From the IMG/VR virus record IMGVR_UViG_3300035698_035366, positions 232,120 through 296,119 of that record: 64,000 bases of DNA; one strand, written 5' to 3'. Shown here piece after piece: positions 3,571 to 31,517 of the stretch. A model generated the notes under the pieces. It was not told the DNA's origin. It did not search any database and saw nothing but the letters and a program-made list of their open reading frames with translations. Within the stretch, counting starts at the first letter, position 1; each line of letters starts with the position of its first letter. Both the position numbers and the translations under genes were made by a program.

Positions 3571-4017
3571 ATGACAAACATTACAACAAACCGCCGCGCG
3601 AAATTTGACTACGAACTGGAACAATCCTACGAAGCGGGGATTGAGCTCGTTGGTTCAGAAGTTAAGACTCTTCGAACTCGTGGAGCCAGCATTGTCGAAT
3701 CATATGTAGAGGTCAAAGACGACGAATGTTGGTTAATTAATGCTAACATTGAACCATATGAACCAGCTAGGATTAATCATGAGCCAAAGCGTCGCCGGAA
3801 GCTTTTGTTGCACCGGCGTGAAATCGACCAGATGACAGTGAAAGTTCAACAGCGTGGATATACTATTGTCCCAGTAAAAATGTATTTTAATTCCAGAGGC
3901 CGAGTGAAGATTGAAATTGCTATCGGCAAGGGGAAGCATACATATGATAAGAAAAGGGCTATTCGTGATCGTATAGTTGATCGAGAAACCCAACGAGAGA
4001 TGAAGAATTTAGGTTAA
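3571..4017 (+). CDS. smpB: SsrA (tmRNA)-binding protein SmpB
   Basis: NRRAKFDY, EAGIELVGSEVK, RRRKLLLHRREI, GKGKHTYDKK; ATG 6 nt after a TATAAT box (leaderless). Confidence 0.97.
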   Translation: MTNITTNRRAKFDYELEQSYEAGIELVGSEVKTLRTRGASIVESYVEVKDDECWLINANIEPYEPARINHEPKRRRKLLLHRREIDQMTVKVQQRGYTIVPVKMYFNSRGRVKIEIAIGKGKHTYDKKRAIRDRIVDRETQREMKNLG

Positions 4018-22217: not shown

Positions 22218-23411
22218 ATGGATGCAAAACAGTTTATAGAGATCGGAAATACGGTGTTTGGTGTTGATACCCGTTGGGGTTCTAAGATGGCAACAGCCAT
22301 TGGTGTAACACCAGCCACTGTTTCGAATATCCGCACCGGTCGCGCCAACATTAGCGAAAAACTCACAAACCGTATCGCTGCACTGGTTGCAAATCGTAAA
22401 GTTGATACTGAAGGTGCAATTAGCTTCGCAGACACCGAAATTGCAGGCGATGCATGTTTTAAGCTTCGGCTTACAGCAACTGATCTTTCCAGCAATAAGT
22501 TTGTTAAGGTTGCTGATGTTAACCCGGCGCTGTTTTTCCCGCGCTTTGCTCCTGAGCCGCAGGTTATGGTTCAGCAGTTTGTCCAGGGTAGTAAGACTGC
22601 GCCGACGGCTTGCAGCGACGATAACCTGACAGACCAGGAAATTTTGGATCGAATTGGTAAGCGTGTTCGTGTTATGGACACCATTACCAACAGTGTTATT
22701 GCTGGTGATATTCCGAGCATGGTTGTTTACGGCGCCCCCGGGGTTGGAAAAAGCTACTCAGTTATGAAGGCGCTGAATGATACGGCGCGGTCGGATACGG
22801 AATTCAAGTTTGACGTGATCAAGGGTTCAGTAACAGCCGCTGGGCTTTACCGAGCACTGTTCAACCAGCGCAACGGCGGTATTGTTATGCTTGATGATTC
22901 GGATTCGATCTTCAAGGACGAGGAAAGCTTGAACCTCTTGAAGGCCGCTCTTGATAGCAGCGATGTTCGCCAGCTCAGCTGGAGGAAACAGTCTCGCTGG
23001 TTGGAAGAGCTTGCTGAAGAAAACGGTTTACGCCTGGAAGACGTCCAGGACTTTGAGTTTGAGGGTGGTGTAATTTTTATCACCAACATCAACCTCAAGG
23101 AGAAAGCACAGGCCGATTCGCGGATGTCACCGCATTACTCGGCTCTTATTAGCCGGTCGTTTTATGTGGACCTTACAACTGACAGTACCCGCGCCCGGTC
23201 CCTTCGTGTTAAGCAGGTGTTTGTTGACGGTACGATGGCAACGGCGCTTGGACTGGATGCGGATCAGGCGGAAGAGATTATGGAGTTTATTTCCGAGAAC
23301 AAGGATGAACTGATGGAAGTCAGCCTTCGGATGGCGAACTCAATTGCCAAGCTTTACCTGGCGGACGCTGACACTTGGAAAGAGATCGTCGAAGTGACGA
23401 AGATGAAATAA
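22218..23411 (+). CDS. HTH + AAA ATPase protein
   Basis: N-terminal HTH (MATAIGVTPATVSNIRTG); Walker A GAPGVGKS; Walker B VMLDD; IFITN. Confidence 0.85.
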   Translation: MDAKQFIEIGNTVFGVDTRWGSKMATAIGVTPATVSNIRTGRANISEKLTNRIAALVANRKVDTEGAISFADTEIAGDACFKLRLTATDLSSNKFVKVADVNPALFFPRFAPEPQVMVQQFVQGSKTAPTACSDDNLTDQEILDRIGKRVRVMDTITNSVIAGDIPSMVVYGAPGVGKSYSVMKALNDTARSDTEFKFDVIKGSVTAAGLYRALFNQRNGGIVMLDDSDSIFKDEESLNLLKAALDSSDVRQLSWRKQSRWLEELAEENGLRLEDVQDFEFEGGVIFITNINLKEKAQADSRMSPHYSALISRSFYVDLTTDSTRARSLRVKQVFVDGTMATALGLDADQAEEIMEFISENKDELMEVSLRMANSIAKLYLADADTWKEIVEVTKMK

Positions 23412-23413
23412 GG

Positions 23414-23761
23414 ATGGAAACGATGGAACAAGACCTATTATTATCATGTCCCTGGGTCAATATAACGGTTCTAGGGAAAACGTCGACCCTCAACTCAGTT
23501 GAAATCGAAGGTTGTAATTTATTTACGCGCCGAATACCAATTAAATGGCCAACGGCTGATTACATTGTAAATTTTATTGACGCCGACGATGAAAACGGTT
23601 ATGATTATGTCATGGTCCATGATCGAGACTTTACTAAAGTGGAATTCATATATGATGTTTCTGCTGAATGCTGGATTGATGTCGAAGTGTTTGATTCGGA
23701 ATCCAATACTTTTAGTGCCGATGAATATATGAATCGAGCAAAGTTTTTAGTTAATAAATAA
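23414..23761 (+). CDS. Hypothetical protein
   Basis: ORF follows the ATPase; start uncertain. Confidence 0.5.
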   Translation: METMEQDLLLSCPWVNITVLGKTSTLNSVEIEGCNLFTRRIPIKWPTADYIVNFIDADDENGYDYVMVHDRDFTKVEFIYDVSAECWIDVEVFDSESNTFSADEYMNRAKFLVNK

Positions 23762-23767
23762 CACGAT

Positions 23768-23836
23768 GGCGGTCGTGCAAGGTCACAGTTACCCTTCATA
23801 CGGGTGATCTGCCAGGCGCAATACCTGGGTCCGCTA
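23768..23836 (+). tRNA. Atypical tRNA-Met(CAT)
   Basis: ttaccc-ttCATac-gggtga; mini D arm; T arm ccagg-cgcaata-cctgg. Confidence 0.6.
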
Positions 23837-23840
23837 CAAA

Positions 23841-23974
23841 CGAGCCGAAGACAAATGGGTTATCATCTTGAAAATGGCCAGCGGGGGTTCGAATCCCTCA
23901 CCTTCCACTAATTTATATATGGGAGGTTAGTGTAGCGGATAGCACGGAAACGCTCCATAGTCATAACTTGCTCG
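23841..23974 (+). ncRNA. Y RNA-like (YrlA-type) RNA
   Basis: cgagcCGAAg.../...cttgctcg terminal stem with the GNCGAAG motif; T arm precedes a closed acceptor stem (accttcca/tgggaggt) then the D arm; cat-ctTGAaa-atg hairpin. Confidence 0.8.
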
Positions 23975-23980
23975 TTTTAT

Positions 23981-24055
23981 GGGGTACGCTCTGGGGAAGC
24001 GGTTTGCACCTGCAATGCGAATGTCTGCCGAATTCGATTTTCGGGTACTCCACCA
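23981..24055 (+). tRNA. tRNA-Ala(TGC), atypical
   Basis: G3:U70; ttgca-ccTGCaa-tgcga; CCA. Confidence 0.75.
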
Positions 24056-24120
24056 AATAACGCTTAATCAAGCGTTATATTGACTTGCATAATAAATATC
24101 GCTATAATAGAGGTATTAAT

Positions 24121-24717
24121 ATGGCTACGTATGAAGATATTGATCTCGACGTTGTAGACTTTGAAGGTTGCGAAGAAGGTTATAGAGAACCAAAGCGTGC
24201 AAAACGCCGTCGGGTAAGAGAACAAAAAATTGAATATACAAAGAAATGGTTAAAAGCAGAACGGAGTCGATACAAAGTTAAAGAACCACATCGCTATCTG
24301 TTTTTAGACCCAGAAGATGATGAAGATATGATGTTTATATGGTCTCTAACAGATGATGATCTAAAACCGTTTAGGGGGTTTCGAAATGAAATCGTTTATT
24401 ACATTGAGGGTTATGGAGTTAAAAATCCGCCAGTGCCATTAATTGATTGGTGTGGACATGAATACACACCAGATTTACCGTTTTTAACTGATGAAGATAT
24501 TGATAAATCAATACGAGCTGAAGCTGTAAAAATTCACAACACACCCAAGCAATGTAATTGTGATTCTTGTAGCAATAAGCGTTCTTATCGTGGAAAGAAA
24601 TATGGTACACGGCAAGAAAGAAGAGCAAGAGAGTCTTTTATAAATATTATGGAAGAATTTGGATACAACCCAAACCCGTTTGTTGGGAAGAGAATAACAA
24701 AGGGTAATGGTTGGTAA
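24121..24717 (+). CDS. Hypothetical protein (C-x-C-x2-C motif)
   Basis: PKQCNCDSCSNKR...TRQERR; RBS gagg. Confidence 0.65.
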   Translation: MATYEDIDLDVVDFEGCEEGYREPKRAKRRRVREQKIEYTKKWLKAERSRYKVKEPHRYLFLDPEDDEDMMFIWSLTDDDLKPFRGFRNEIVYYIEGYGVKNPPVPLIDWCGHEYTPDLPFLTDEDIDKSIRAEAVKIHNTPKQCNCDSCSNKRSYRGKKYGTRQERRARESFINIMEEFGYNPNPFVGKRITKGNGW

Positions 24718-24722
24718 GAAAT

Positions 24723-24805
24723 GGAAGCTTAATTGGGCTGGGCCCGAGACCGCCTTGAAAGCGGATCGTACCGAGAGGTATGGGGTTCGATTCCTCAGGC
24801 TTCCG
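24723..24805 (+). tRNA. tRNA-Ser(TGA)
   Basis: ccgc-ctTGAaa-gcgg; long variable arm; G73. Confidence 0.87.
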
Positions 24806-24815
24806 CAGAATTTAT

Positions 24816-24889
24816 TGGGGTATAGTATAATGGTAGTGCAGAGGGTTTTGATCCCTCTGGCCCGGGTTCGATTCCTGGTACCCCAGCCA
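24816..24889 (+). tRNA. tRNA-Gln(TTG)
   Basis: gaggg-ttTTGat-ccctc; CCA. Confidence 0.92.
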
Positions 24890-25168
24890 AATATTAAAGT
24901 TGGTTATAATGAAATATATTGATAAATTTTTAAGTAAATTACCGCATAGGAATAGAATTAATTTAACTCCAGATCAATGCGGAACGGTATGGGTTTCACT
25001 AAATGAACATACGCAATCAGGCAGTGTTGTCATTCGTTCCGACATAAAACAGTGGTTAGAGGATAATAATATTCATTACCAATTTATTGGTCATAGAAAA
25101 CAGTTATGTTTTTTGAAGAAGAATGATGCTATAATGTTCCAGTTAACCTGGGTAGAATAGAATTTAAT

Positions 25169-25256
25169 GGAAAGTAAATCTAGCAGGGTCTAGAGGGGGA
25201 TTGCTAATCCTTTCGCACTTGAAAAATAGTGTTCGGTTCGAGTCCGATGCTTTCCT
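25169..25256 (+). tRNA. tRNA-Ser(GCT)
   Basis: gggga-ttGCTaa-tcctt; long variable arm. Confidence 0.85.
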
Positions 25257-25260
25257 CAAA

Positions 25261-25377
25261 GGGCCGATAATAAAAGGTTACCCAAACAGCAGGTCGTGAG
25301 TTCAAACCTCACTCGCAGTCATTGTTGATTGTGATAGCTCAGTTGGTAGAGCAGCCGTCATTACGCTTTTATTGCCC
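25261..25377 (+). ncRNA. Y RNA-like (YrlA-type) RNA
   Basis: gggcCGA..aataaaag/cttttatt-gccc stem; T arm, closed acceptor tcgcagtca-ttgt-tgattgtga, then D arm tagctcagttggtagagc. Confidence 0.8.
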
Positions 25378-25393
25378 ACTTGCCCTTTACTTT

Positions 25394-25477
25394 GGACGAT
25401 AATCTTGGATGGGTCCAAGGACTGCCTCGAAAACAGATTGTACCGAAAGGTATCTGGTTCAATTCCAGTGTCGTCCG
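25394..25477 (+). tRNA. tRNA-Ser(CGA)
   Basis: ctgc-ctCGAaa-acag; variable arm taccgaaaggta; G73. Confidence 0.82.
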
Positions 25478-25490
25478 CACGAGGATTAAA

Positions 25491-25697
25491 ATGAGATATC
25501 TAACAGACAAAAAACGCCATCTTATATGTGAACCATATAGTATAGAAAATTTGCATATTATGGCAAATGATTTAGGTATCAAACGTTGTTGGTTCCATCG
25601 AACACATTATGATATACCAAAGAGAAGAATAAAAGAAATTGAGGACCAATGCGAGATAGTATCATCGCAAGATATTGTTCGTATAATTAAAATTTAA
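25491..25697 (+). CDS. DUF4031-like small protein
   Basis: HLI...S.ENLH.MA..LGIKRCWFH..HYDI. Confidence 0.75.
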   Translation: MRYLTDKKRHLICEPYSIENLHIMANDLGIKRCWFHRTHYDIPKRRIKEIEDQCEIVSSQDIVRIIKI

Positions 25698-25788
25698 TGC
25701 CGTCAGAACAAGTGTTCAGAGGGGTCTTATAAGCCCTTTCCACCAGATTAGTGGCTTTGGCTGGGAGCGTTACCCAGGGCGGCGACCA
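25698..25788 (+). tRNA. tRNA-Ile(TAT), atypical D arm, variable arm and T-loop
   Basis: ggggt-ctTATaa-gccct; D arm gaac-aagt-gttc; T-loop agcgtta; A73-CCA. Confidence 0.7.
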
Positions 25789-25859
25789 ACTAAGTAAATT
25801 CTTGTCTTATTGAAGAATAAAGTATAAATAATAAAAACACTTTATGCAAGGATTTCAAA

Positions 25860-26417
25860 ATGTCAAAAGAACTTAAAAAACATATGCGCACAATGCTTGA
25901 TCTAATGGAGGCTGATGTTACTCAGGGACCTTGGACTGGTCAAGGTGTTGGTCCGCAACAAGGTACAGGTAATATGTACAATATGACGACAGGACAGAAA
26001 GTCACTGGTCCAATGGATATGTCAAAGGCTGAAAAGCTAGATCTAGCTGATGTTTTTGGTGGCGATGAATATTCAACTATTAGAAAGCTCGGTTATACAT
26101 GGTTTGAAAAGCCAGGATATTTTAGTGATATTAAGGAGAAGACTTCCATTCCAAGAGGCGAGGTCGCCCGAGTTGAGCGTGCAATTGGTAGAAAATTAGA
26201 AAATGTTTACATGGGTGATTTAATAGTTCCATTTAAAGATGGGAATTATTATCCACAAGCTGATGCTGATTTTGAACGTTACCCAGAAGAAACTGTAATT
26301 GTCACTGTCAGTAAATGGGACGCAGAAGATAGCGATGAAGTTAGAGATGGTGATATATTTCTTGCAAACCGTACAGGTGCAAGCAAGTATTATCGTATGT
26401 GGATGCGCGTCATTTAA
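25860..26417 (+). CDS. Hypothetical late protein
   Basis: TATAAATA and RBS aagga upstream. Confidence 0.65.
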   Translation: MSKELKKHMRTMLDLMEADVTQGPWTGQGVGPQQGTGNMYNMTTGQKVTGPMDMSKAEKLDLADVFGGDEYSTIRKLGYTWFEKPGYFSDIKEKTSIPRGEVARVERAIGRKLENVYMGDLIVPFKDGNYYPQADADFERYPEETVIVTVSKWDAEDSDEVRDGDIFLANRTGASKYYRMWMRVI

Positions 26418-26429
26418 TCTCAAGTTTAT

Positions 26430-26503
26430 AGGGGGATAGTATAATGGTAGTGCAGCGGGTTCTGATCCCGCTGGTCGGGGTTCGATTCCCTGTCCCCCTG
26501 CCA
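26430..26503 (+). tRNA. tRNA-Gln(CTG)
   Basis: gcggg-ttCTGat-cccgc; CCA. Confidence 0.92.
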
Positions 26504-26688
26504 AATGAGAAAATTTATAATTATCTCAATATTTTGTTTTCTAACAAGCTGTACATCATATAGCCAATGTGCCAAGAATGGTGAAAATTGGGGGTATGTT
26601 TATGGTATATTTAAAACTAAAAATCCAGTTAAAATTAAAATCTATTCAATAGTAGGCCAAGAAATAGGTTCTAAATATTGCAAATAAC

Positions 26689-26760
26689 GCCGGTATAGTG
26701 ATAATGGTAGCACGAGGCATTGGTAATGCTTTAGTGGTGGTTCAATTCCTCCTATCGGCA
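26689..26760 (+). tRNA. tRNA-Thr(GGT)
   Basis: aggca-ttGGTaa-tgctt. Confidence 0.87.
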
Positions 26761-26872
26761 CTCAATTAAAAGGTTGACTAATGATGTAATCGTGTTATAA
26801 TAAAACATATTAAGGGAATGCCACGCGCCCATGCATATTGCAGAAAAACGTAAACTCCAATGGAGAAGCACA

Positions 26873-27607
26873 ATGGATCGAAAAGTTTGGAACATCGAAG
26901 AGTTTAACAAGGTTAATCTCCCCGAGGTTATTGGTTCAATAACCAATCGAAATAGATTCTCAGAATTTAACAGGACTCGCGTATTGGACCTGCCAATTCA
27001 TATGCCCGGGCAGGGATGGAAGATTCCATCCGAGATTAATAATTTCTTAGAACCAATCAAATTGGCTGCAAAAGCTGAAAGCCGCTTTGGTGATTTCCTA
27101 AACACTCATTACGTTTATGTGACAATTGATCAAAAGGTTGTCCAAGCCGGGAAGACTGGCCGTCGTGCTGGCGCCCATTCGGATGCCTATATAGAAGTAG
27201 ACGAAGAACAGCTTGATCTGATAGCTGAAAATGCTGATGCTATCGCTAAAGAAAAACAAGAAGTATCACATACATATGTTATTGCTGATCAAGTACCAAC
27301 GGAGTTTTTCAATGCGAAATTCCCGTTAGTGGATAGTTCATGCAACGGCGGATCATTAAAAACTTTTGATGAGATTGCAGAAAAAGCAGAAATAATAACG
27401 TATCCAGGATACACGTTGCTTCGTATGGATCCATATGTTGTTCACAGAAGCGCATTGGTTACAGAGACGATGGAACGAACATTTATGAAAATTAGCTTTT
27501 CGCGCAAAAAATATGCGAGGAAAGGAAATACAGTTAACCCAGGATTTGAATATGACTGGGAATTGACAGCGCGTTCACCTGATAAAAGAAATCATCCCTG
27601 GAAATAG
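26873..27607 (+). CDS. Putative 2OG-Fe(II) dioxygenase
   Basis: H-S-D ... VVHRS ... RTFMKISFS pattern; start 26873 after ggag. Confidence 0.55.
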   Translation: MDRKVWNIEEFNKVNLPEVIGSITNRNRFSEFNRTRVLDLPIHMPGQGWKIPSEINNFLEPIKLAAKAESRFGDFLNTHYVYVTIDQKVVQAGKTGRRAGAHSDAYIEVDEEQLDLIAENADAIAKEKQEVSHTYVIADQVPTEFFNAKFPLVDSSCNGGSLKTFDEIAEKAEIITYPGYTLLRMDPYVVHRSALVTETMERTFMKISFSRKKYARKGNTVNPGFEYDWELTARSPDKRNHPWK

Positions 27608-27662
27608 ATAGATAACTATACAATAATATTGTATACTGTTATCTTAATATAGGAGCGTTATT

Positions 27663-28526
27663 ATGACAGGATACACAACAAGAATTGCACCAAGCCCAAC
27701 GGGTGATATGCACCTGGGGACCGCTCGCACGGCTTATTTCAATTGGCTGATGGCTCGAGCATCAGGTGGTAAATTCATTCTTCGTATTGATGATACTGAT
27801 CTCGCAAGGAACGATCAGAAACATATTGATATTATTCTAGAGACAATGGAGTGGCTTGGGTTAACTTATGATGAGCTAGAATATCAGAGCAAACGTATCG
27901 ATGTGTATTATCGAGCAACAAATGATCTTGTCAAAAAGGGATTTACGACTACATTAGAGAATGGTGCAATTGCTGTTAATCTATCTTCTGTGATTGATTT
28001 CCCAACCACATGGCGCGATGAGATTTCAGGTGATATTAATATCACATCAACCAACCACGATCAAACAGATGGTATGATTCTTATTAAAGGAAATGGATAT
28101 CCGGGTTACAATTGGGCTTCGGTGGTTGATGATGTTGATCTTGGTGTAGATTATATTATTCGAGGCCATGATCATATCACAAACACTTCAAGCCAAGCAA
28201 TTCTTTATAAGTTACTAGATAAGCCATTGCCCAAATTTGCGCATGTTGGTTTAATTCACGCCAATAAAAAGAAAATGTCCAAGCGTGATGGTGCTGCGAG
28301 TATGATGCAGTATAAAGCCGATGGGTATGATCCAGACGCATTGTTGAATTTTATGCTTCGTCTTGGATGGGGGCCAACTATCGACGATAAAACGACTAAG
28401 ACTATTGACAAGGATCGTGCATTAGAGTTGTTTATTAATGGTGGACGAATGCGATCCGCCCCATCAAATTTAGATACAGCAATGCTAAATTCATATGATA
28501 GAAAATATAAGGCTAGAAAGAAATAA
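27663..28526 (+). CDS. Minimal glutamyl-tRNA synthetase-like protein (catalytic domain only; GluQ-RS-like)
   Basis: RIAPSPTGDMHLGTARTA, LRIDDTD, IRGHDH, KMSKR; 287 aa, no Zn-cysteine cluster, no anticodon-binding domain. Confidence 0.88.
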   Translation: MTGYTTRIAPSPTGDMHLGTARTAYFNWLMARASGGKFILRIDDTDLARNDQKHIDIILETMEWLGLTYDELEYQSKRIDVYYRATNDLVKKGFTTTLENGAIAVNLSSVIDFPTTWRDEISGDINITSTNHDQTDGMILIKGNGYPGYNWASVVDDVDLGVDYIIRGHDHITNTSSQAILYKLLDKPLPKFAHVGLIHANKKKMSKRDGAASMMQYKADGYDPDALLNFMLRLGWGPTIDDKTTKTIDKDRALELFINGGRMRSAPSNLDTAMLNSYDRKYKARKK

Positions 28527-28541
28527 TCTAGCCTTAGATCG

Positions 28542-28612
28542 ATGAGCCGAAGGTTTAGGGTTATCATTTTGACTTCTAATCAAACCAACACCCTTTTCCA
28601 CTCCTTGCTCAT
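28542..28612 (+). ncRNA. Minimal Y RNA-like RNA carrying an Arg(TCT) anticodon stem-loop
   Basis: atgagcCGAAGG/CCTTgctcat stem; gggttatcat shared with 23841; tttga-ctTCTaa-tcaaa. Confidence 0.7.
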
Positions 28613-28950
28613 TCTTAATAGGAAAAATAAATGAACATCGACGATATGATAAAACTAATTCGGCCAATACATAACGATATTTGTATTCTTTATGATACTA
28701 ATTTGGTTCGAGTTGTTGGTGTGGCTGAAGATGAAAGGGATTTGTATTATATTGTTCGAGATTTGGAACATCGAGATCATCCAGAACACTGGGCATCTGC
28801 GGTTGGGCATATTGTCAGCCTGAATGGGATTTACCCTGAAGAGCGATATAAACATATGGATGATGTATTTCGGATGAATGGTGCAGAAAGAAGTGAAGAA
28901 TTTATTGTTATCGTAGAAGAATAAGAGTTGTTCTTCTGACTAAATACGAT

Positions 28951-29361
28951 ATGTCATACAAAATTAGATACATACCGAATCTCATCGCGGCTCTTATAAC
29001 CAACACCATCGAGCCACCACCAGATAGAATGGTTGAGATACAAGAATGGTATGATCATATCAAAAAAAGCATATTAGAAGAAGGTTTCCGCAATCCCGTT
29101 GTCTTAACAGCAAAAGACGGTAAACTGGAACCACGTTATGGTGGTACAAGGGTTAAAATTGCACAAGAACACGGAATGAAAATACCAGCTATTATTGCAG
29201 ATTTTGATGATCAATTTCCCGAAGCTGAAACATTGGAAACATGGGAAGTTCCAGATAAATTCCTAGACAAACCAAAGAAAATACTCTTTAAGACCTATGG
29301 AATCAATGCTTCGGGCTTACCTGATACCGTAGAAGAATTCAATAAAAAACTTGACAAATAG
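28951..29361 (+). CDS. ParB/Srx-like domain protein
   Basis: SILEEGFRNPVVL...GGTRVKIA. Confidence 0.7.
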   Translation: MSYKIRYIPNLIAALITNTIEPPPDRMVEIQEWYDHIKKSILEEGFRNPVVLTAKDGKLEPRYGGTRVKIAQEHGMKIPAIIADFDDQFPEAETLETWEVPDKFLDKPKKILFKTYGINASGLPDTVEEFNKKLDK

Positions 29362-31384: not shown

Positions 31385-31394
31385 GATATGTTAT

Positions 31395-31517
31395 GGACCG
31401 GTAGCTCAGAGGCAGAGCAGCGGGCTTTGGTAGAAAGGGTTTCAAGCCCATTAGAGTGCAAATCTCAAATCTACAAACCTAATCCGCGTGTCGAGATTTC
31501 GAAATTCTCCCGGTCTA
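31395..31517 (+). tRNA. tRNA-Lys-like gene with a 51-nt insertion (intron?) in the anticodon loop
   Basis: Flanks nearly identical to tRNA-Lys 15419; loop 31425-31482 is 58 nt; removing 31429-31479 gives ctTTTaa. Confidence 0.7.

What the first reader, a model, noticed from the sequence alone, without database searches (positions are those of the whole stretch)
23841..28612. Three phage Y-RNA-like RNAs, two displaying anticodon-loop decoys
SEEN: 23841-23974 and 25261-25377 have the permuted order T arm, closed acceptor stem, D arm, inside a terminal stem starting G(A/G)GCCGA. The element at 28542-28612 keeps the same stem (gagcCGAAGG/CCTTgctc) and the gggttatcat motif but carries only an anticodon hairpin (tttga-ctTCTaa-tcaaa, Arg). 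The first RNA also has cat-ctTGAaa-atg (Ser). KNOWN: YrlA Y RNAs are tRNA mimics bound by Ro60/Rsr through a GNCGAAG bulged helix. INFERENCE: the anticodon loops could act as decoys or sensors for anticodon nucleases, releasing Ro60 on cleavage. No Ro60/TROVE gene is in this window.
Basis: partly seen in the sequence, partly recalled or inferred. Interest (0 to 1): 0.8.

Follow-up and report, generated by a model that had tools for sequence, protein, structure and literature searches.

The report
Phage Y RNAs scattered among tRNA genes
Three small non-coding RNAs in the tRNA gene island of a 296-kb salt-lake phage are Y RNAs, the partners of the RNA-binding protein Ro60, which this phage encodes 134 kb away; two of them, like many of their relatives, carry a hairpin that closely copies a tRNA anticodon loop.

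Summary
All three elements are at the stated places; only E2 needs a correction, because its true 3' strand lies 11 nt further on (25258-25388).

- **Ro60 link.** The shared motif (GCCGAAG, a short gap, GGGTTATCAT) found nine independent structured elements in viral contigs, and seven sit next to a Ro60 gene.
- **Model from small Y RNAs.** It scores E3 at 57.5 bits and E1 at 33.8 bits.
- **Model from Ro60-adjacent phage YrlA-type RNAs.** It was built from 21 RNAs, none from this window, and scores E2 at 73.5 bits and E1 at 70.7 bits.
- **Ro60 in this phage.** The window has no Ro60 gene. The same contig has an intact one about 134 kb upstream, with at least three more Y RNAs beside it.

E1 and E2 are YrlA-type Y RNAs and E3 is a small Y RNA. 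The class is known, phages included. Less expected are their position inside tRNA operons far from Ro60, and the anticodon-like hairpin:

- Across 103 relatives, the hairpin after UUAUC most often has a 7-nt loop with consensus C-U-N-N-N-A-A.
- 17 loops fit the anticodon pattern, against 0.4 expected.

The decoy or sensor idea for anticodon nucleases remains untested. No RNA data were available.

The parts
23840..23975 (+). E1: YrlA-type Y RNA, about 136 nt, lying between a tRNA-like gene (23767-23836) and a tRNA-Cys-like gene (23980-24053)
   Evidence: R2 70.7 bits, E = 4e-14, full model length. R1 33.8 bits, E = 2e-6. Fold.
23840..23850 (+). E1 5' strand of the Ro60-binding module: lower stem ACGAGC, bulged C23846, G.U and A-U pairs, unpaired A. 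It contains the GNCGAAG motif.
   Evidence: Sequence. Aligned to the R1 and R2 consensus. The motif is defined in Chen 2014.
23850..23864 (+). E1 upper-stem 5' strand ending in GGG, followed by UUAUC (23860-23864)
   Evidence: Sequence. UUAUC is present in 79 of 103 family members. It corresponds to the YUAY motif of YrlA.
23863..23877 (+). E1 anticodon-like hairpin UCAU|CUUGAAA|AUGG. Its loop is identical to the anticodon loop of the phage tRNA-Ser(UGA)-like gene at 24723-24804.
23883..23899 (+). E1 T arm (GGGGG / UUCGAAU / CCCUC)
23900..23927 (+). E1 closed acceptor-like stem: ACCUUCC pairs with GGGAGGU (7 bp, including G3.U70), closed by a 14-nt stretch that begins A-CUA
   Evidence: Weak tmRNA-type Rfam matches.
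23930..23945 (+). E1 D arm (GUGU / AGCGGAUA / GCAC)
23954..23975 (+). E1 3' strand of the module: upper stem, internal loop AUAA, CUUG, lower stem GCUCGU
25258..25388 (+). E2: YrlA-type Y RNA, 131 nt, abutting the tRNA-Ser(GCU)-like gene (ends about 25257) and the tRNA-Ser(CGA)-like gene (starts 25394).
   Evidence: R2 73.5 bits, E = 9e-15. R1 with filters off 23.9 bits. Rfam YrlA 24.6 bits, below the gathering score of 69. Fold.
25258..25282 (+). E2 5' strand: lower stem AAAGGGC, bulged C25265, GA, U, upper stem AAUAAAAG, then GGUUACC (the UUACC variant of the motif)
   Evidence: UUACC occurs in 18 of 103 relatives.
25296..25312 (+). E2 T arm (GUGAG / UUCAAAC / CUCAC)
25313..25334 (+). E2 closed acceptor-like stem: 9 bp closed by the loop UUGU
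25337..25352 (+). E2 D arm (GCUC / AGUUGGUA / GAGC)
25366..25388 (+). E2 3' strand: upper stem CUUUUAUU, internal loop GCCCAC, UU, lower stem GCCCUUU
28542..28612 (+). E3: small Y RNA, 71 nt, in the 105-nt gap between the GluQRS-like gene (stop at 28526) and the next ORF (start at 28631)
   Evidence: R1 57.5 bits (E3 was a seed). R2 25.5 bits, E = 8e-4, independent of E3. Rfam sbRNA RF01656 16.4 bits. Fold z-score -3.06.
28542..28565 (+). E3 5' strand: lower stem AUGAGC, bulged C28548, GAA, upper stem GGUUUAGGG, then UUAUC
28568..28584 (+). E3 anticodon-like hairpin UUUGA|CUUCUAA|UCAAA: 5-bp stem and 7-nt loop
28591..28612 (+). E3 3' strand: upper stem CCCUUUUCC (three U.U mismatches), internal loop ACUC, CUUG, lower stem GCUCAU

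Best explanation
E1, E2 and E3 are three Y RNAs of a huge phage.

Shown:
- Each has the Ro60-binding module. It consists of a lower stem with a bulged C, then G.U and A-U pairs, an asymmetric internal loop, an upper stem, and a loop that opens with UUAUC or UUACC.
- E1 and E2 add the YrlA-type tRNA-like domain: T arm, acceptor stem closed by a loop, D arm.
- E1 and E3 add a hairpin whose 7-nt loop copies an anticodon loop.
- The phage encodes an intact Ro60 about 134 kb away, beside further Y RNAs.

Inferred:
- The three RNAs are transcribed as parts of mixed tRNA/mRNA operons.
- E1 and E2 are cut free by the enzymes that process the tRNAs abutting them. E3 sits in an intergenic gap without flanking tRNAs, so how it is released is open.
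- They are bound by the phage Ro60 through the module.
- Their tRNA-like parts (the elbow, and in E1 and E3 the anticodon-like loop) bring Ro60 together with proteins that recognise tRNA, or with a host exoribonuclease such as PNPase. The RNP would then act on tRNA or other structured RNA during infection.
For: 1. The shared motif was searched in viral contigs as DNA only. It found nine independent structured elements, and seven lie within about 1 kb of a Ro60 gene. None of the six in-ORF chance matches does.
2. Model R1 found 99 matches (E < 0.1) in 75 viral Ro60 loci. All are on the Ro60 strand and flank the gene.
3. Across 103 matches, 90.2% of cells are paired against 65% in shuffles. There are 478 compensatory cells against 162 in shuffles, and at most 141 when the 3' partners are slid by 1-3 columns.
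4. Model R2 was built from 21 Ro60-adjacent phage YrlA-type RNAs. It scores E2 at 73.5 bits and E1 at 70.7 bits over the full length. In its seed alignment, 20 of 25 pairs show compensatory change.
5. The window's own contig encodes a 544-aa protein with TROVE and vWA_Ro60 domains. It scores 434 bits to D. radiodurans Rsr and 424 bits to X. laevis Ro60. At least three R1 matches lie upstream of it.
6. E1 and E2 lie directly between tRNA-like genes, with no terminator-like site on the + strand.
7. From the literature:
   - the YrlA features are listed in Chen 2014;
   - in D. radiodurans a Y RNA tethers Rsr to PNPase (Chen 2014, abstract);
   - a phage Ro60 with its Yrl RNAs binds host PNPase (PMC12135203).
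8. 21 of 60 viral Ro60 loci have tRNA genes within 2.5 kb, all on the same strand.
Against: - No expression data: no RNA run was listed for this sequence.
- Rfam's own YrlA model reaches only 24.6 bits on E2 (gathering score 69) and misses E1.
- The RNAs are 134 kb from Ro60, whereas published YrlA genes are nearly all within 4 kb of it.
- E3's upper stem has three U.U mismatches.
- No syntenic relative of this phage was found, so E1-E3 have no orthologues of their own for covariation.
- The binding partner of the tRNA-like domain is unknown even for the studied YrlA RNAs.
Confidence: 0.78

Rival explanations
1. The anticodon-like loops of E1 and E3 act as decoys or sensors for host anticodon nucleases. 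They soak up or report the nuclease, and cleavage changes the Ro60 complex.
For: - Anticodon-type loops are strongly enriched at this position across the family: 17 observed against 0.43 +/- 0.66 in shuffles. The loop consensus is C-U-N-N-N-A-A.
- They also occur in bacterial Y RNAs (11 of 26).
- The loop is kept while the stem covaries (L003 against L014).
- Close relatives differ in the 'anticodon' alone (L024 CUUGAAA, L025 CUUGUAA).
- The RNAs sit in a tRNA island, which is consistent with conflict over tRNAs.
- The Salmonella rsr-yrlBA-rtcBA operon is induced by tRNA halves. Hughes et al. proposed that YrlA might be a competitive inhibitor of an anticodon nuclease.
Against: - No nuclease, host or cleavage data are available.
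- The stems are short (4 bp in E1).
- E2 has no such loop.
- Salmonella YrlA was not a substrate of the nuclease studied.
- The loops would serve equally well for modification enzymes or for RNA-RNA pairing.
Confidence: 0.2
2. The anticodon-like hairpin is chiefly a legacy of descent from tRNA genes. In the dimeric-tRNA origin model, the anticodon arm, variable loop and T arm come from a first tRNA, and the acceptor 5' strand and D arm from a second. The hairpin is then kept as a stable U-turn loop that helps folding, without any partner that reads anticodon loops.
For: - In YrlA-type members the hairpin is followed by a variable-loop-like (A/G)GGUC and then the T stem, as in a tRNA (R2 consensus).
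- E1's acceptor 3' strand is followed by A-CUA, a decayed ACCA.
- Real tandem tRNA pairs in the window give partial matches to R2.
- The origin model is cited in Wang et al. 2018.
Against: - Small Y RNAs with no other tRNA part (E3, L003a, L089 and others) keep the loop.
- The loop framework is conserved across Ro60 proteins that are only 45-55% identical, while the stems covary. Neutral decay would have erased it.
Confidence: 0.3
3. E1 and E2 are non-functional debris of tandem tRNA gene duplications in a tRNA-rich region, and E3 is a chance hairpin.
For: The window holds 34 called tRNA genes and several degenerate ones. Tandem tRNA pairs give partial R2 matches.
Against: - All three carry the complete Ro60-binding module, with E-values from 1e-6 to 1e-14.
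- Tandem tRNAs lack this module and score at most 38 bits.
- The phage has a Ro60 to bind them.
Confidence: 0.03
4. E1 is a two-piece, tmRNA-like or permuted-tRNA precursor. It would be cut in the loop that closes the acceptor stem, repaired to CCA, and charged with alanine through G3.U70. It would then work with the phage SmpB encoded at 3571-4017.
For: - G3.U70 in the closed acceptor stem.
- A T arm and 3' strand resembling the tmRNA tRNA-like domain, with weak Rfam matches: permuted tmRNA 17.5 bits and tmRNA 13.1 bits.
- SmpB is in the window and no tmRNA was found there.
Against: - There is no tag reading frame and no pseudoknots.
- E1 has a proper D arm, which tmRNA lacks.
- The end reads ACUA, not ACCA.
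- The full-length match to YrlA-type RNAs explains every part of E1.
Confidence: 0.03

Closest known systems
YrlA Y RNAs of bacteria and mycobacteriophages (Chen et al. 2014, PMC4201824; Rfam RF02553)
   Same: E1 and E2 share these features:
- a GNCGAA-type motif near the 5' end;
- YUAY at the start of the next loop;
- an optional 'V' hairpin;
- a T arm, an acceptor-like stem closed by a loop, and a D arm;
- a Ro60 gene in the same genome, on the same strand.
   Different: - They lie 134 kb from Ro60 instead of within 4 kb.
- They are embedded in tRNA operons.
- They score below Rfam's gathering score.
- In E1 the V hairpin has a full anticodon-type 7-nt loop, whereas the structural paper states that YrlA lacks an anticodon loop.
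Yrl1 and Yrl2 of Thermus phage phiLo with phage Ro60 (PMC12135203)
   Same: Phage-encoded Ro60 with several small Y-like RNAs that have a stem, a bulge and a CGAA motif. The proposed role is to capture host PNPase.
   Different: - The phiLo RNAs lie just upstream of Ro60, and no tRNA-like domain is reported for them.
- The phiLo Ro60 is only distantly related to this phage's Ro60 (22.6 bits).
Nematode stem-bulge RNAs and vertebrate Y RNAs (Rfam RF01656; Kowalski and Krude 2015, PMC4726728)
   Same: - The layout is the same as in E3: lower stem with a bulged C in CCGA paired to UUG, one unpaired base on the 5' side against 4-5 on the 3' side, a 9-bp upper stem ending GGG/CCC, and a loop opening with UUAUC.
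- Three Ro60-adjacent phage relatives pass RF01656's gathering score of 38 bits (40.2, 40.2 and 38.1 bits).
   Different: - E3 itself scores 16.4 bits.
- E3 has no 3' oligo-U tail.
- This is a phage and bacterial setting.
- The UUAUC motif of animal RNAs has been tied to DNA replication, which has no known counterpart here.
Deinococcus radiodurans Yrn1
   Same: A Ro60 (Rsr)-bound Y RNA with tRNA-like parts, including a possible 'anticodon arm'. It tethers Rsr to PNPase.
   Different: In Yrn1 the order of the arms relative to the RNA's ends differs, the loop has 6 nt, and the D arm is incomplete.

Membership tests
YrlA-type Y RNA (Chen et al. 2014; Rfam RF02553) | GNCGAAN0-1G motif near the 5' end | tested here: met
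   E1 and E3 have GCCGAAG. E2 has GCCGAUA, a variant also seen in Ro60-adjacent members such as L036, L033 and L059.
YrlA-type Y RNA (Chen et al. 2014; Rfam RF02553) | Conserved YUAY that begins the V loop | tested here: met
   UUAU in E1 and E3, UUAC in E2. UUAUC or UUACC is present in 97 of 103 relatives.
YrlA-type Y RNA (Chen et al. 2014; Rfam RF02553) | T-like and D-like stem-loops with tRNA-invariant bases, in the order T, closed acceptor-like stem, D | tested here: met
   Met for E1 and E2. E3 has none of these and is a small Y RNA, not a YrlA.
YrlA-type Y RNA (Chen et al. 2014; Rfam RF02553) | Score at or above Rfam's gathering score (69 bits) | tested here: not met
   E2 scores 24.6 bits (E = 0.059) and E1 has no match. 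Ro60-adjacent phage relatives also stay below it, at 29-38 bits, so the Rfam model fits this branch poorly.
YrlA-type Y RNA (Chen et al. 2014; Rfam RF02553) | Full-length match to a model of RNAs that lie next to Ro60 genes | tested here: met
   Model R2, from 21 viral Ro60-adjacent RNAs: E2 73.5 bits, E1 70.7 bits.
YrlA-type Y RNA (Chen et al. 2014; Rfam RF02553) | Encoded within about 4 kb of Ro60, on the same strand | tested here: not met
   Ro60 is at contig positions 120185-121819 and E1 at about 255960. They are about 134 kb apart, on the same strand.
YrlA-type Y RNA (Chen et al. 2014; Rfam RF02553) | Bound by Ro60/Rsr; carries tRNA-type modifications | not testable with these tools
   This needs binding assays and RNA from infected cells. 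No RNA run was listed.
Animal Y RNA / nematode sbRNA (Rfam RF00019, RF01656) | Bulged-C lower stem, asymmetric internal loop, upper stem, UUAUC at the start of the loop | tested here: met
   E1 and E3.
Animal Y RNA / nematode sbRNA (Rfam RF00019, RF01656) | Rfam gathering score | tested here: not met
   E3 scores 16.4 bits against 38, and there is no RF00019 match. Three phage relatives do pass RF01656.
Two-piece (permuted) tmRNA | Tag reading frame, pseudoknots, CCA end, alanine identity pair | tested here: not met
   Only G3.U70 and the T arm fit. There is no room for a tag frame and the end is ACUA. Rfam scores are 17.5 and 13.1 bits against a gathering score of 47.

The most novel reading that the evidence does not exclude
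The hairpin that follows UUAUC in phage and bacterial Y RNAs may be a selected mimic of the tRNA anticodon stem-loop. It would present the Ro60 particle to enzymes that read anticodon loops, either anticodon nucleases or the A37-modifying enzymes. In support of the second, 24 of 27 loops have U or A at position 36 and 20 of 27 have A at position 37, as in tRNAs that carry t6A or i6A. On this reading Ro60 is tied directly to surveillance of tRNA damage. Huge phages would place extra copies inside their tRNA operons so that decoy and tRNA are made together.
Probability: 0.2. Interest if true: 0.8.

Novelty: new variant of a known kind. Interest (0 to 1): 0.55.

Why it matters
Ro60 and Y RNAs have been known for four decades, yet the partner of the tRNA-like domain of bacterial Y RNAs is still unknown.

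- **Where to look.** Y RNAs need not sit beside Ro60. A huge phage scatters them through its tRNA operons, so surveys that look only near Ro60 will miss some.
- **A testable feature.** Many phage and bacterial Y RNAs carry a conserved anticodon-type loop. The literature read here does not describe it; one paper states that YrlA lacks an anticodon loop. It gives a concrete handle: does the loop meet anticodon nucleases, modification enzymes or other RNAs?
- **Common descent.** The module is almost identical to that of nematode and vertebrate Y RNAs. Some phage relatives pass Rfam's threshold for a nematode family. The phage Ro60 is as close to the frog protein as to the bacterial one. This bears on whether bacterial and animal Y RNAs share an ancestor, which a 2015 review denied.

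Tried and rejected
- **Phage records.** Megablast of 23400-29000 against 50,697 phage records found nothing.
- **Relatives of a neighbouring protein.** A search with 26831-27607 in viral contigs returned only the window's own contig, so E1-E3 have no syntenic orthologues.
- **Rfam at gathering thresholds.** Only tRNAs were found in the window.
- **Ro60 in the window.** The tblastn search was negative. Pfam scans of about 45 window proteins found no RtcB, RNA ligase or PNPase.
- **RNA evidence.** No RNA run was listed.
- **DNA contigs from four other samples of the same lake.** They carry the same phage with no variation in E1-E3, so there is no population covariation to use.
- **A tmRNA to go with the phage SmpB.** None was found.
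- **A 'tRNA-ended' Y chimera in the window.** None was found; it occurs only in other contigs.
- **My first loose motif scans.** They mostly returned chance matches and were replaced by covariance models.
- **The first anticodon-loop count.** It also picked up T loops and the UUAUC motif itself, so I redid it with position limits.
- **Two reviews.** PMC10870794 and PMC6047535 are not held, so I cannot exclude that they mention anticodon-like loops.

Full report
**What is there**

The window is the last 64 kb (232120-296119) of a 296,119-bp viral contig, IMGVR_UViG_3300035698_035366. It comes from a salt-lake metagenome.
- ARAGORN tRNA genes, all on the + strand. Several more tRNA-like genes go uncalled.
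- There is no close match among deposited phages.
- The nearest protein-level relative of one gene is an uncultured 635-kb phage.

The three elements lie in gaps within this tRNA island.
- **Flanks.**
  - E1 (23840-23975) sits between a tRNA-like gene and a tRNA-Cys-like gene.
  - E2 sits between tRNA-Ser(GCU)-like and tRNA-Ser(CGA)-like genes.
  - E3 (28542-28612) sits just after a 287-aa truncated Glu-type synthetase gene.

**Are they Y RNAs?**

Rfam's YrlA model touches only E2, and weakly: 24.6 bits against a gathering score of 69. I therefore asked the sequence collections directly.

- **Motif search.**
  - The motif shared by E1 and E3 (GCCGAAG, 4-8 bases, GGGTTATCAT) matched 18 viral loci.
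  - Six matches lie inside reading frames and have no pairing partner.
  - After removing duplicates, the rest are structured elements in nine contigs.
  - In seven of those nine a Ro60 gene (TROVE plus vWA_Ro60) lies within about 1 kb.
- **Model R1.**
  - I built it from 14 small elements.
  - In 75 further viral Ro60 loci it found 99 matches, all on the Ro60 strand and flanking the gene.
- **Covariation.** Over 103 matches, 90.2% of cells pair against 65% in shuffles. Compensatory changes number 478 cells against 162 in shuffles, and at most 141 when the partners are slid.
- **In the window.**
  - R1 scores E3 at 57.5 bits (a seed of the model) and E1 at 33.8 bits (not a seed).
  - With filters off it scores E2 at 23.9 bits.
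- **Model R2.**
  - I built it only from 21 Ro60-adjacent phage RNAs of the YrlA type, none from the window. In that alignment 20 of 25 pairs show compensatory change.
  - It scores E2 at 73.5 bits and E1 at 70.7 bits over its full length.
  - Real tandem tRNA pairs reach at most 38 bits.
- **E2 boundary.** Both models place E2's 3' strand at 25378-25388, so E2 is 25258-25388 and has a canonical module.

**Where is Ro60?**

Not in the window. A profile of eight phage Ro60 proteins found 308 viral contigs. One of the 80 loci returned is from the window's own contig.
- The gene spans contig positions 120185-121819, on the same strand, about 134 kb from E1.
- The protein has 544 aa with both Ro60 domains.
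- It scores almost equally against bacterial Rsr (434 bits), frog Ro60 (424 bits) and human RO60 (417 bits).
- About 2 kb of non-coding DNA upstream of it holds at least three more Y RNAs. All have the same GAGCCGAA start as E1 and E3. A wcaG RNA motif lies there too.

**How they compare with what is known**

Chen et al. 2014 defined YrlA by the following features:
- a GNCGAAN0-1G motif;
- a conserved YUAY that opens the 'V' loop, and an optional V hairpin;
- T and D arms around a closed acceptor-like stem;
- a position within about 4 kb of Ro60.

They found such RNAs in 254 bacterial species and 22 phages.

E1 and E2 meet every structural feature. They fail only the distance to Ro60 and the Rfam threshold. 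Phage Ro60 with Y-like RNAs has since been studied in Thermus phage phiLo, where the complex binds host PNPase. Some jumbo phages are also known to carry TROVE proteins. The class is therefore known.

E3 and its relatives resemble animal Y RNAs closely.
- The layout matches nematode stem-bulge RNAs base for base in the conserved parts.
- Three Ro60-adjacent phage RNAs pass that family's gathering score.
- The same module occurs next to Ro60 in Deinococcus, Armatimonadota, Verrucomicrobiota, Planctomycetota, Myxococcota and Chloroflexota.
- A 2015 review held that bacterial Y RNAs are not homologous to the vertebrate ones, and noted UUAUC as an animal feature.

**The anticodon-like hairpin**

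In a YrlA-type RNA the Ro60-binding stem stands where the anticodon stem would be. The hairpin before the T arm is the 'V' stem-loop of Chen et al. Even so, its loop looks like an anticodon loop, and not only in the window:
- 66 of 103 relatives have a hairpin of at least 4 bp right after UUAUC.
- A 7-nt loop is the commonest size: 27 cases against 5.9 in shuffles.
- The loop consensus is C (20/27), U (23/27), N, N, N, A (20/27), A (21/27).
- 17 loops fit Y-U-NNN-R, against 0.43 +/- 0.66 in shuffles (maximum 3 in 300 shuffles).
- These 17 come from at least 13 contigs, whose Ro60 proteins are only about 45-55% identical to the query where compared.

Further points:
- In YrlA-type members the hairpin is followed by a variable-loop-like GGUC and then the T stem, as in a real tRNA.
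- Between related phages the loop is kept while the stem covaries (L003 against L014). Elsewhere only the middle triplet changes (L024 against L025).
- E1's loop, CUUGAAA, equals the anticodon loop of the phage tRNA-Ser(UGA)-like gene about 850 nt downstream.
- The structural paper on YrlA states that YrlA lacks an anticodon loop. It also cites a model in which YrlA arose from a tRNA dimer. E1 fits that model well: an anticodon-like arm, a 5-nt linker, a T arm, a 3' acceptor strand followed by A-CUA, a spacer, a 5' acceptor strand and a D arm.

**How it most likely works**

Shown:
- the module and its tie to Ro60;
- the tRNA-like domains;
- the phage's own Ro60;
- the position of the RNAs inside tRNA operons.

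Inferred:
- **Transcription.** The RNAs are co-transcribed with their neighbours. Sigma-70-like promoters lie at 24080-24108 and 26774-26801, and there are no + strand terminators.
- **Release.** E1 and E2 are released by tRNA-processing enzymes.
- **Binding and tethering.** They are bound by the phage Ro60. Ro60 is then tethered to a tRNA-recognising partner or to an exoribonuclease, as in the D. radiodurans and phiLo complexes.

A third of viral Ro60 loci lie in or beside tRNA arrays, which points to tRNA metabolism as the field of action.

A purely historical or structural role for the loop is at least as likely on present evidence.

**Limits**
- No RNA data were available.
- No orthologues of E1-E3 themselves were found, and there is no natural variation in the lake samples.
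- Only 64 kb plus one 6.6-kb piece of the 296-kb genome could be read.

Noticed in passing
L003:3506-3632; also L014 (same as L006), L023 about 2653-2781, L004 and L018 (minus strand), L024 about 2755-2885, L025, L043: These are 'tRNA-ended' Y chimeras, a circular permutation of E1. The acceptor stem is open, as in a normal tRNA gene. The Ro60-binding module is closed by a tetraloop (GCAA, CUUG, AUUA) and sits between the D arm and an anticodon-like hairpin. Rfam reads the L003 copy as a tRNA (43.4 bits) with a 63-nt insert. There is none in the window. I did not find this form described in the papers I could read.
   Followed up: partly
window 3571-4017: A phage-encoded SmpB (Pfam 185 bits), but no tmRNA was detected anywhere in the window by ARAGORN or Rfam. 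E1's closed acceptor stem carries G3.U70 and gives weak tmRNA-type matches.
   Followed up: partly
L056:810-925 (same contig as the window, upstream of Ro60): A wcaG RNA motif (Rfam RF01761, 56.2 bits, gathering score 42) lies directly after two Y RNAs in the 2-kb non-coding stretch before the phage Ro60 gene.
   Followed up: no
window 23767-23836, 23980-24053, 24723-24804, 25169-25257, 25394-25476, 25698-25784, 31394-31510: Seven tRNA-like genes that ARAGORN and the Rfam tRNA model do not call:
- three serine-type genes (UGA, GCU, CGA) interleaved with E1 and E2;
- one Cys-like gene;
- one with a CAU loop and an odd T loop;
- one with a long arm and a 9-nt loop;
- one with an insert of about 45 nt in the anticodon region.
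   Followed up: partly
L059:4477-4615: A Ro60-adjacent Y RNA whose loop holds a whole tRNA in normal order (acceptor, D, anticodon and T arms). ARAGORN calls it tRNA-Ile inside the Y RNA.
   Followed up: no
L056:1-2460 and the window + strand (for example 28536): AGATCG occurs 7 times on the + strand of the non-coding stretch before Ro60 (0 on the other strand, 0.6 expected), and four of the seven are immediately upstream of a Y RNA or close to one. It also precedes E3. In the window it is three times commoner on the + strand (33 against 11), often as GGAGATCGA just before a start codon. This may be a processing or initiation signal.
   Followed up: partly
alignment A4 (103 Y RNAs), 7-nt hairpin loops: Position 36 of the anticodon-like loops is U in 15 and A in 9 of 27. 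Position 37 is A in 20. That is the pattern of tRNAs that receive t6A37 or i6A37. Serine-type triplets (GCU, UGA, CGA) are the commonest: 15 of 55 over all sets. Relatedness of the sequences was not controlled for.
   Followed up: partly
window 27663-28526: A 287-aa protein with only the class I Glu/Gln synthetase catalytic domain (210 bits), the size and make-up of glutamyl-Q tRNA(Asp) synthetase. It lies directly upstream of E3 and is probably co-transcribed with it.
   Followed up: no
L079:5902-6248; L032, L065, L067, L087, L088: Other phage Ro60 loci sit inside tRNA arrays (up to 14 tRNA genes within 2.5 kb, all on the Ro60 strand). One has a tmRNA gene beside the Y RNAs.
   Followed up: partly
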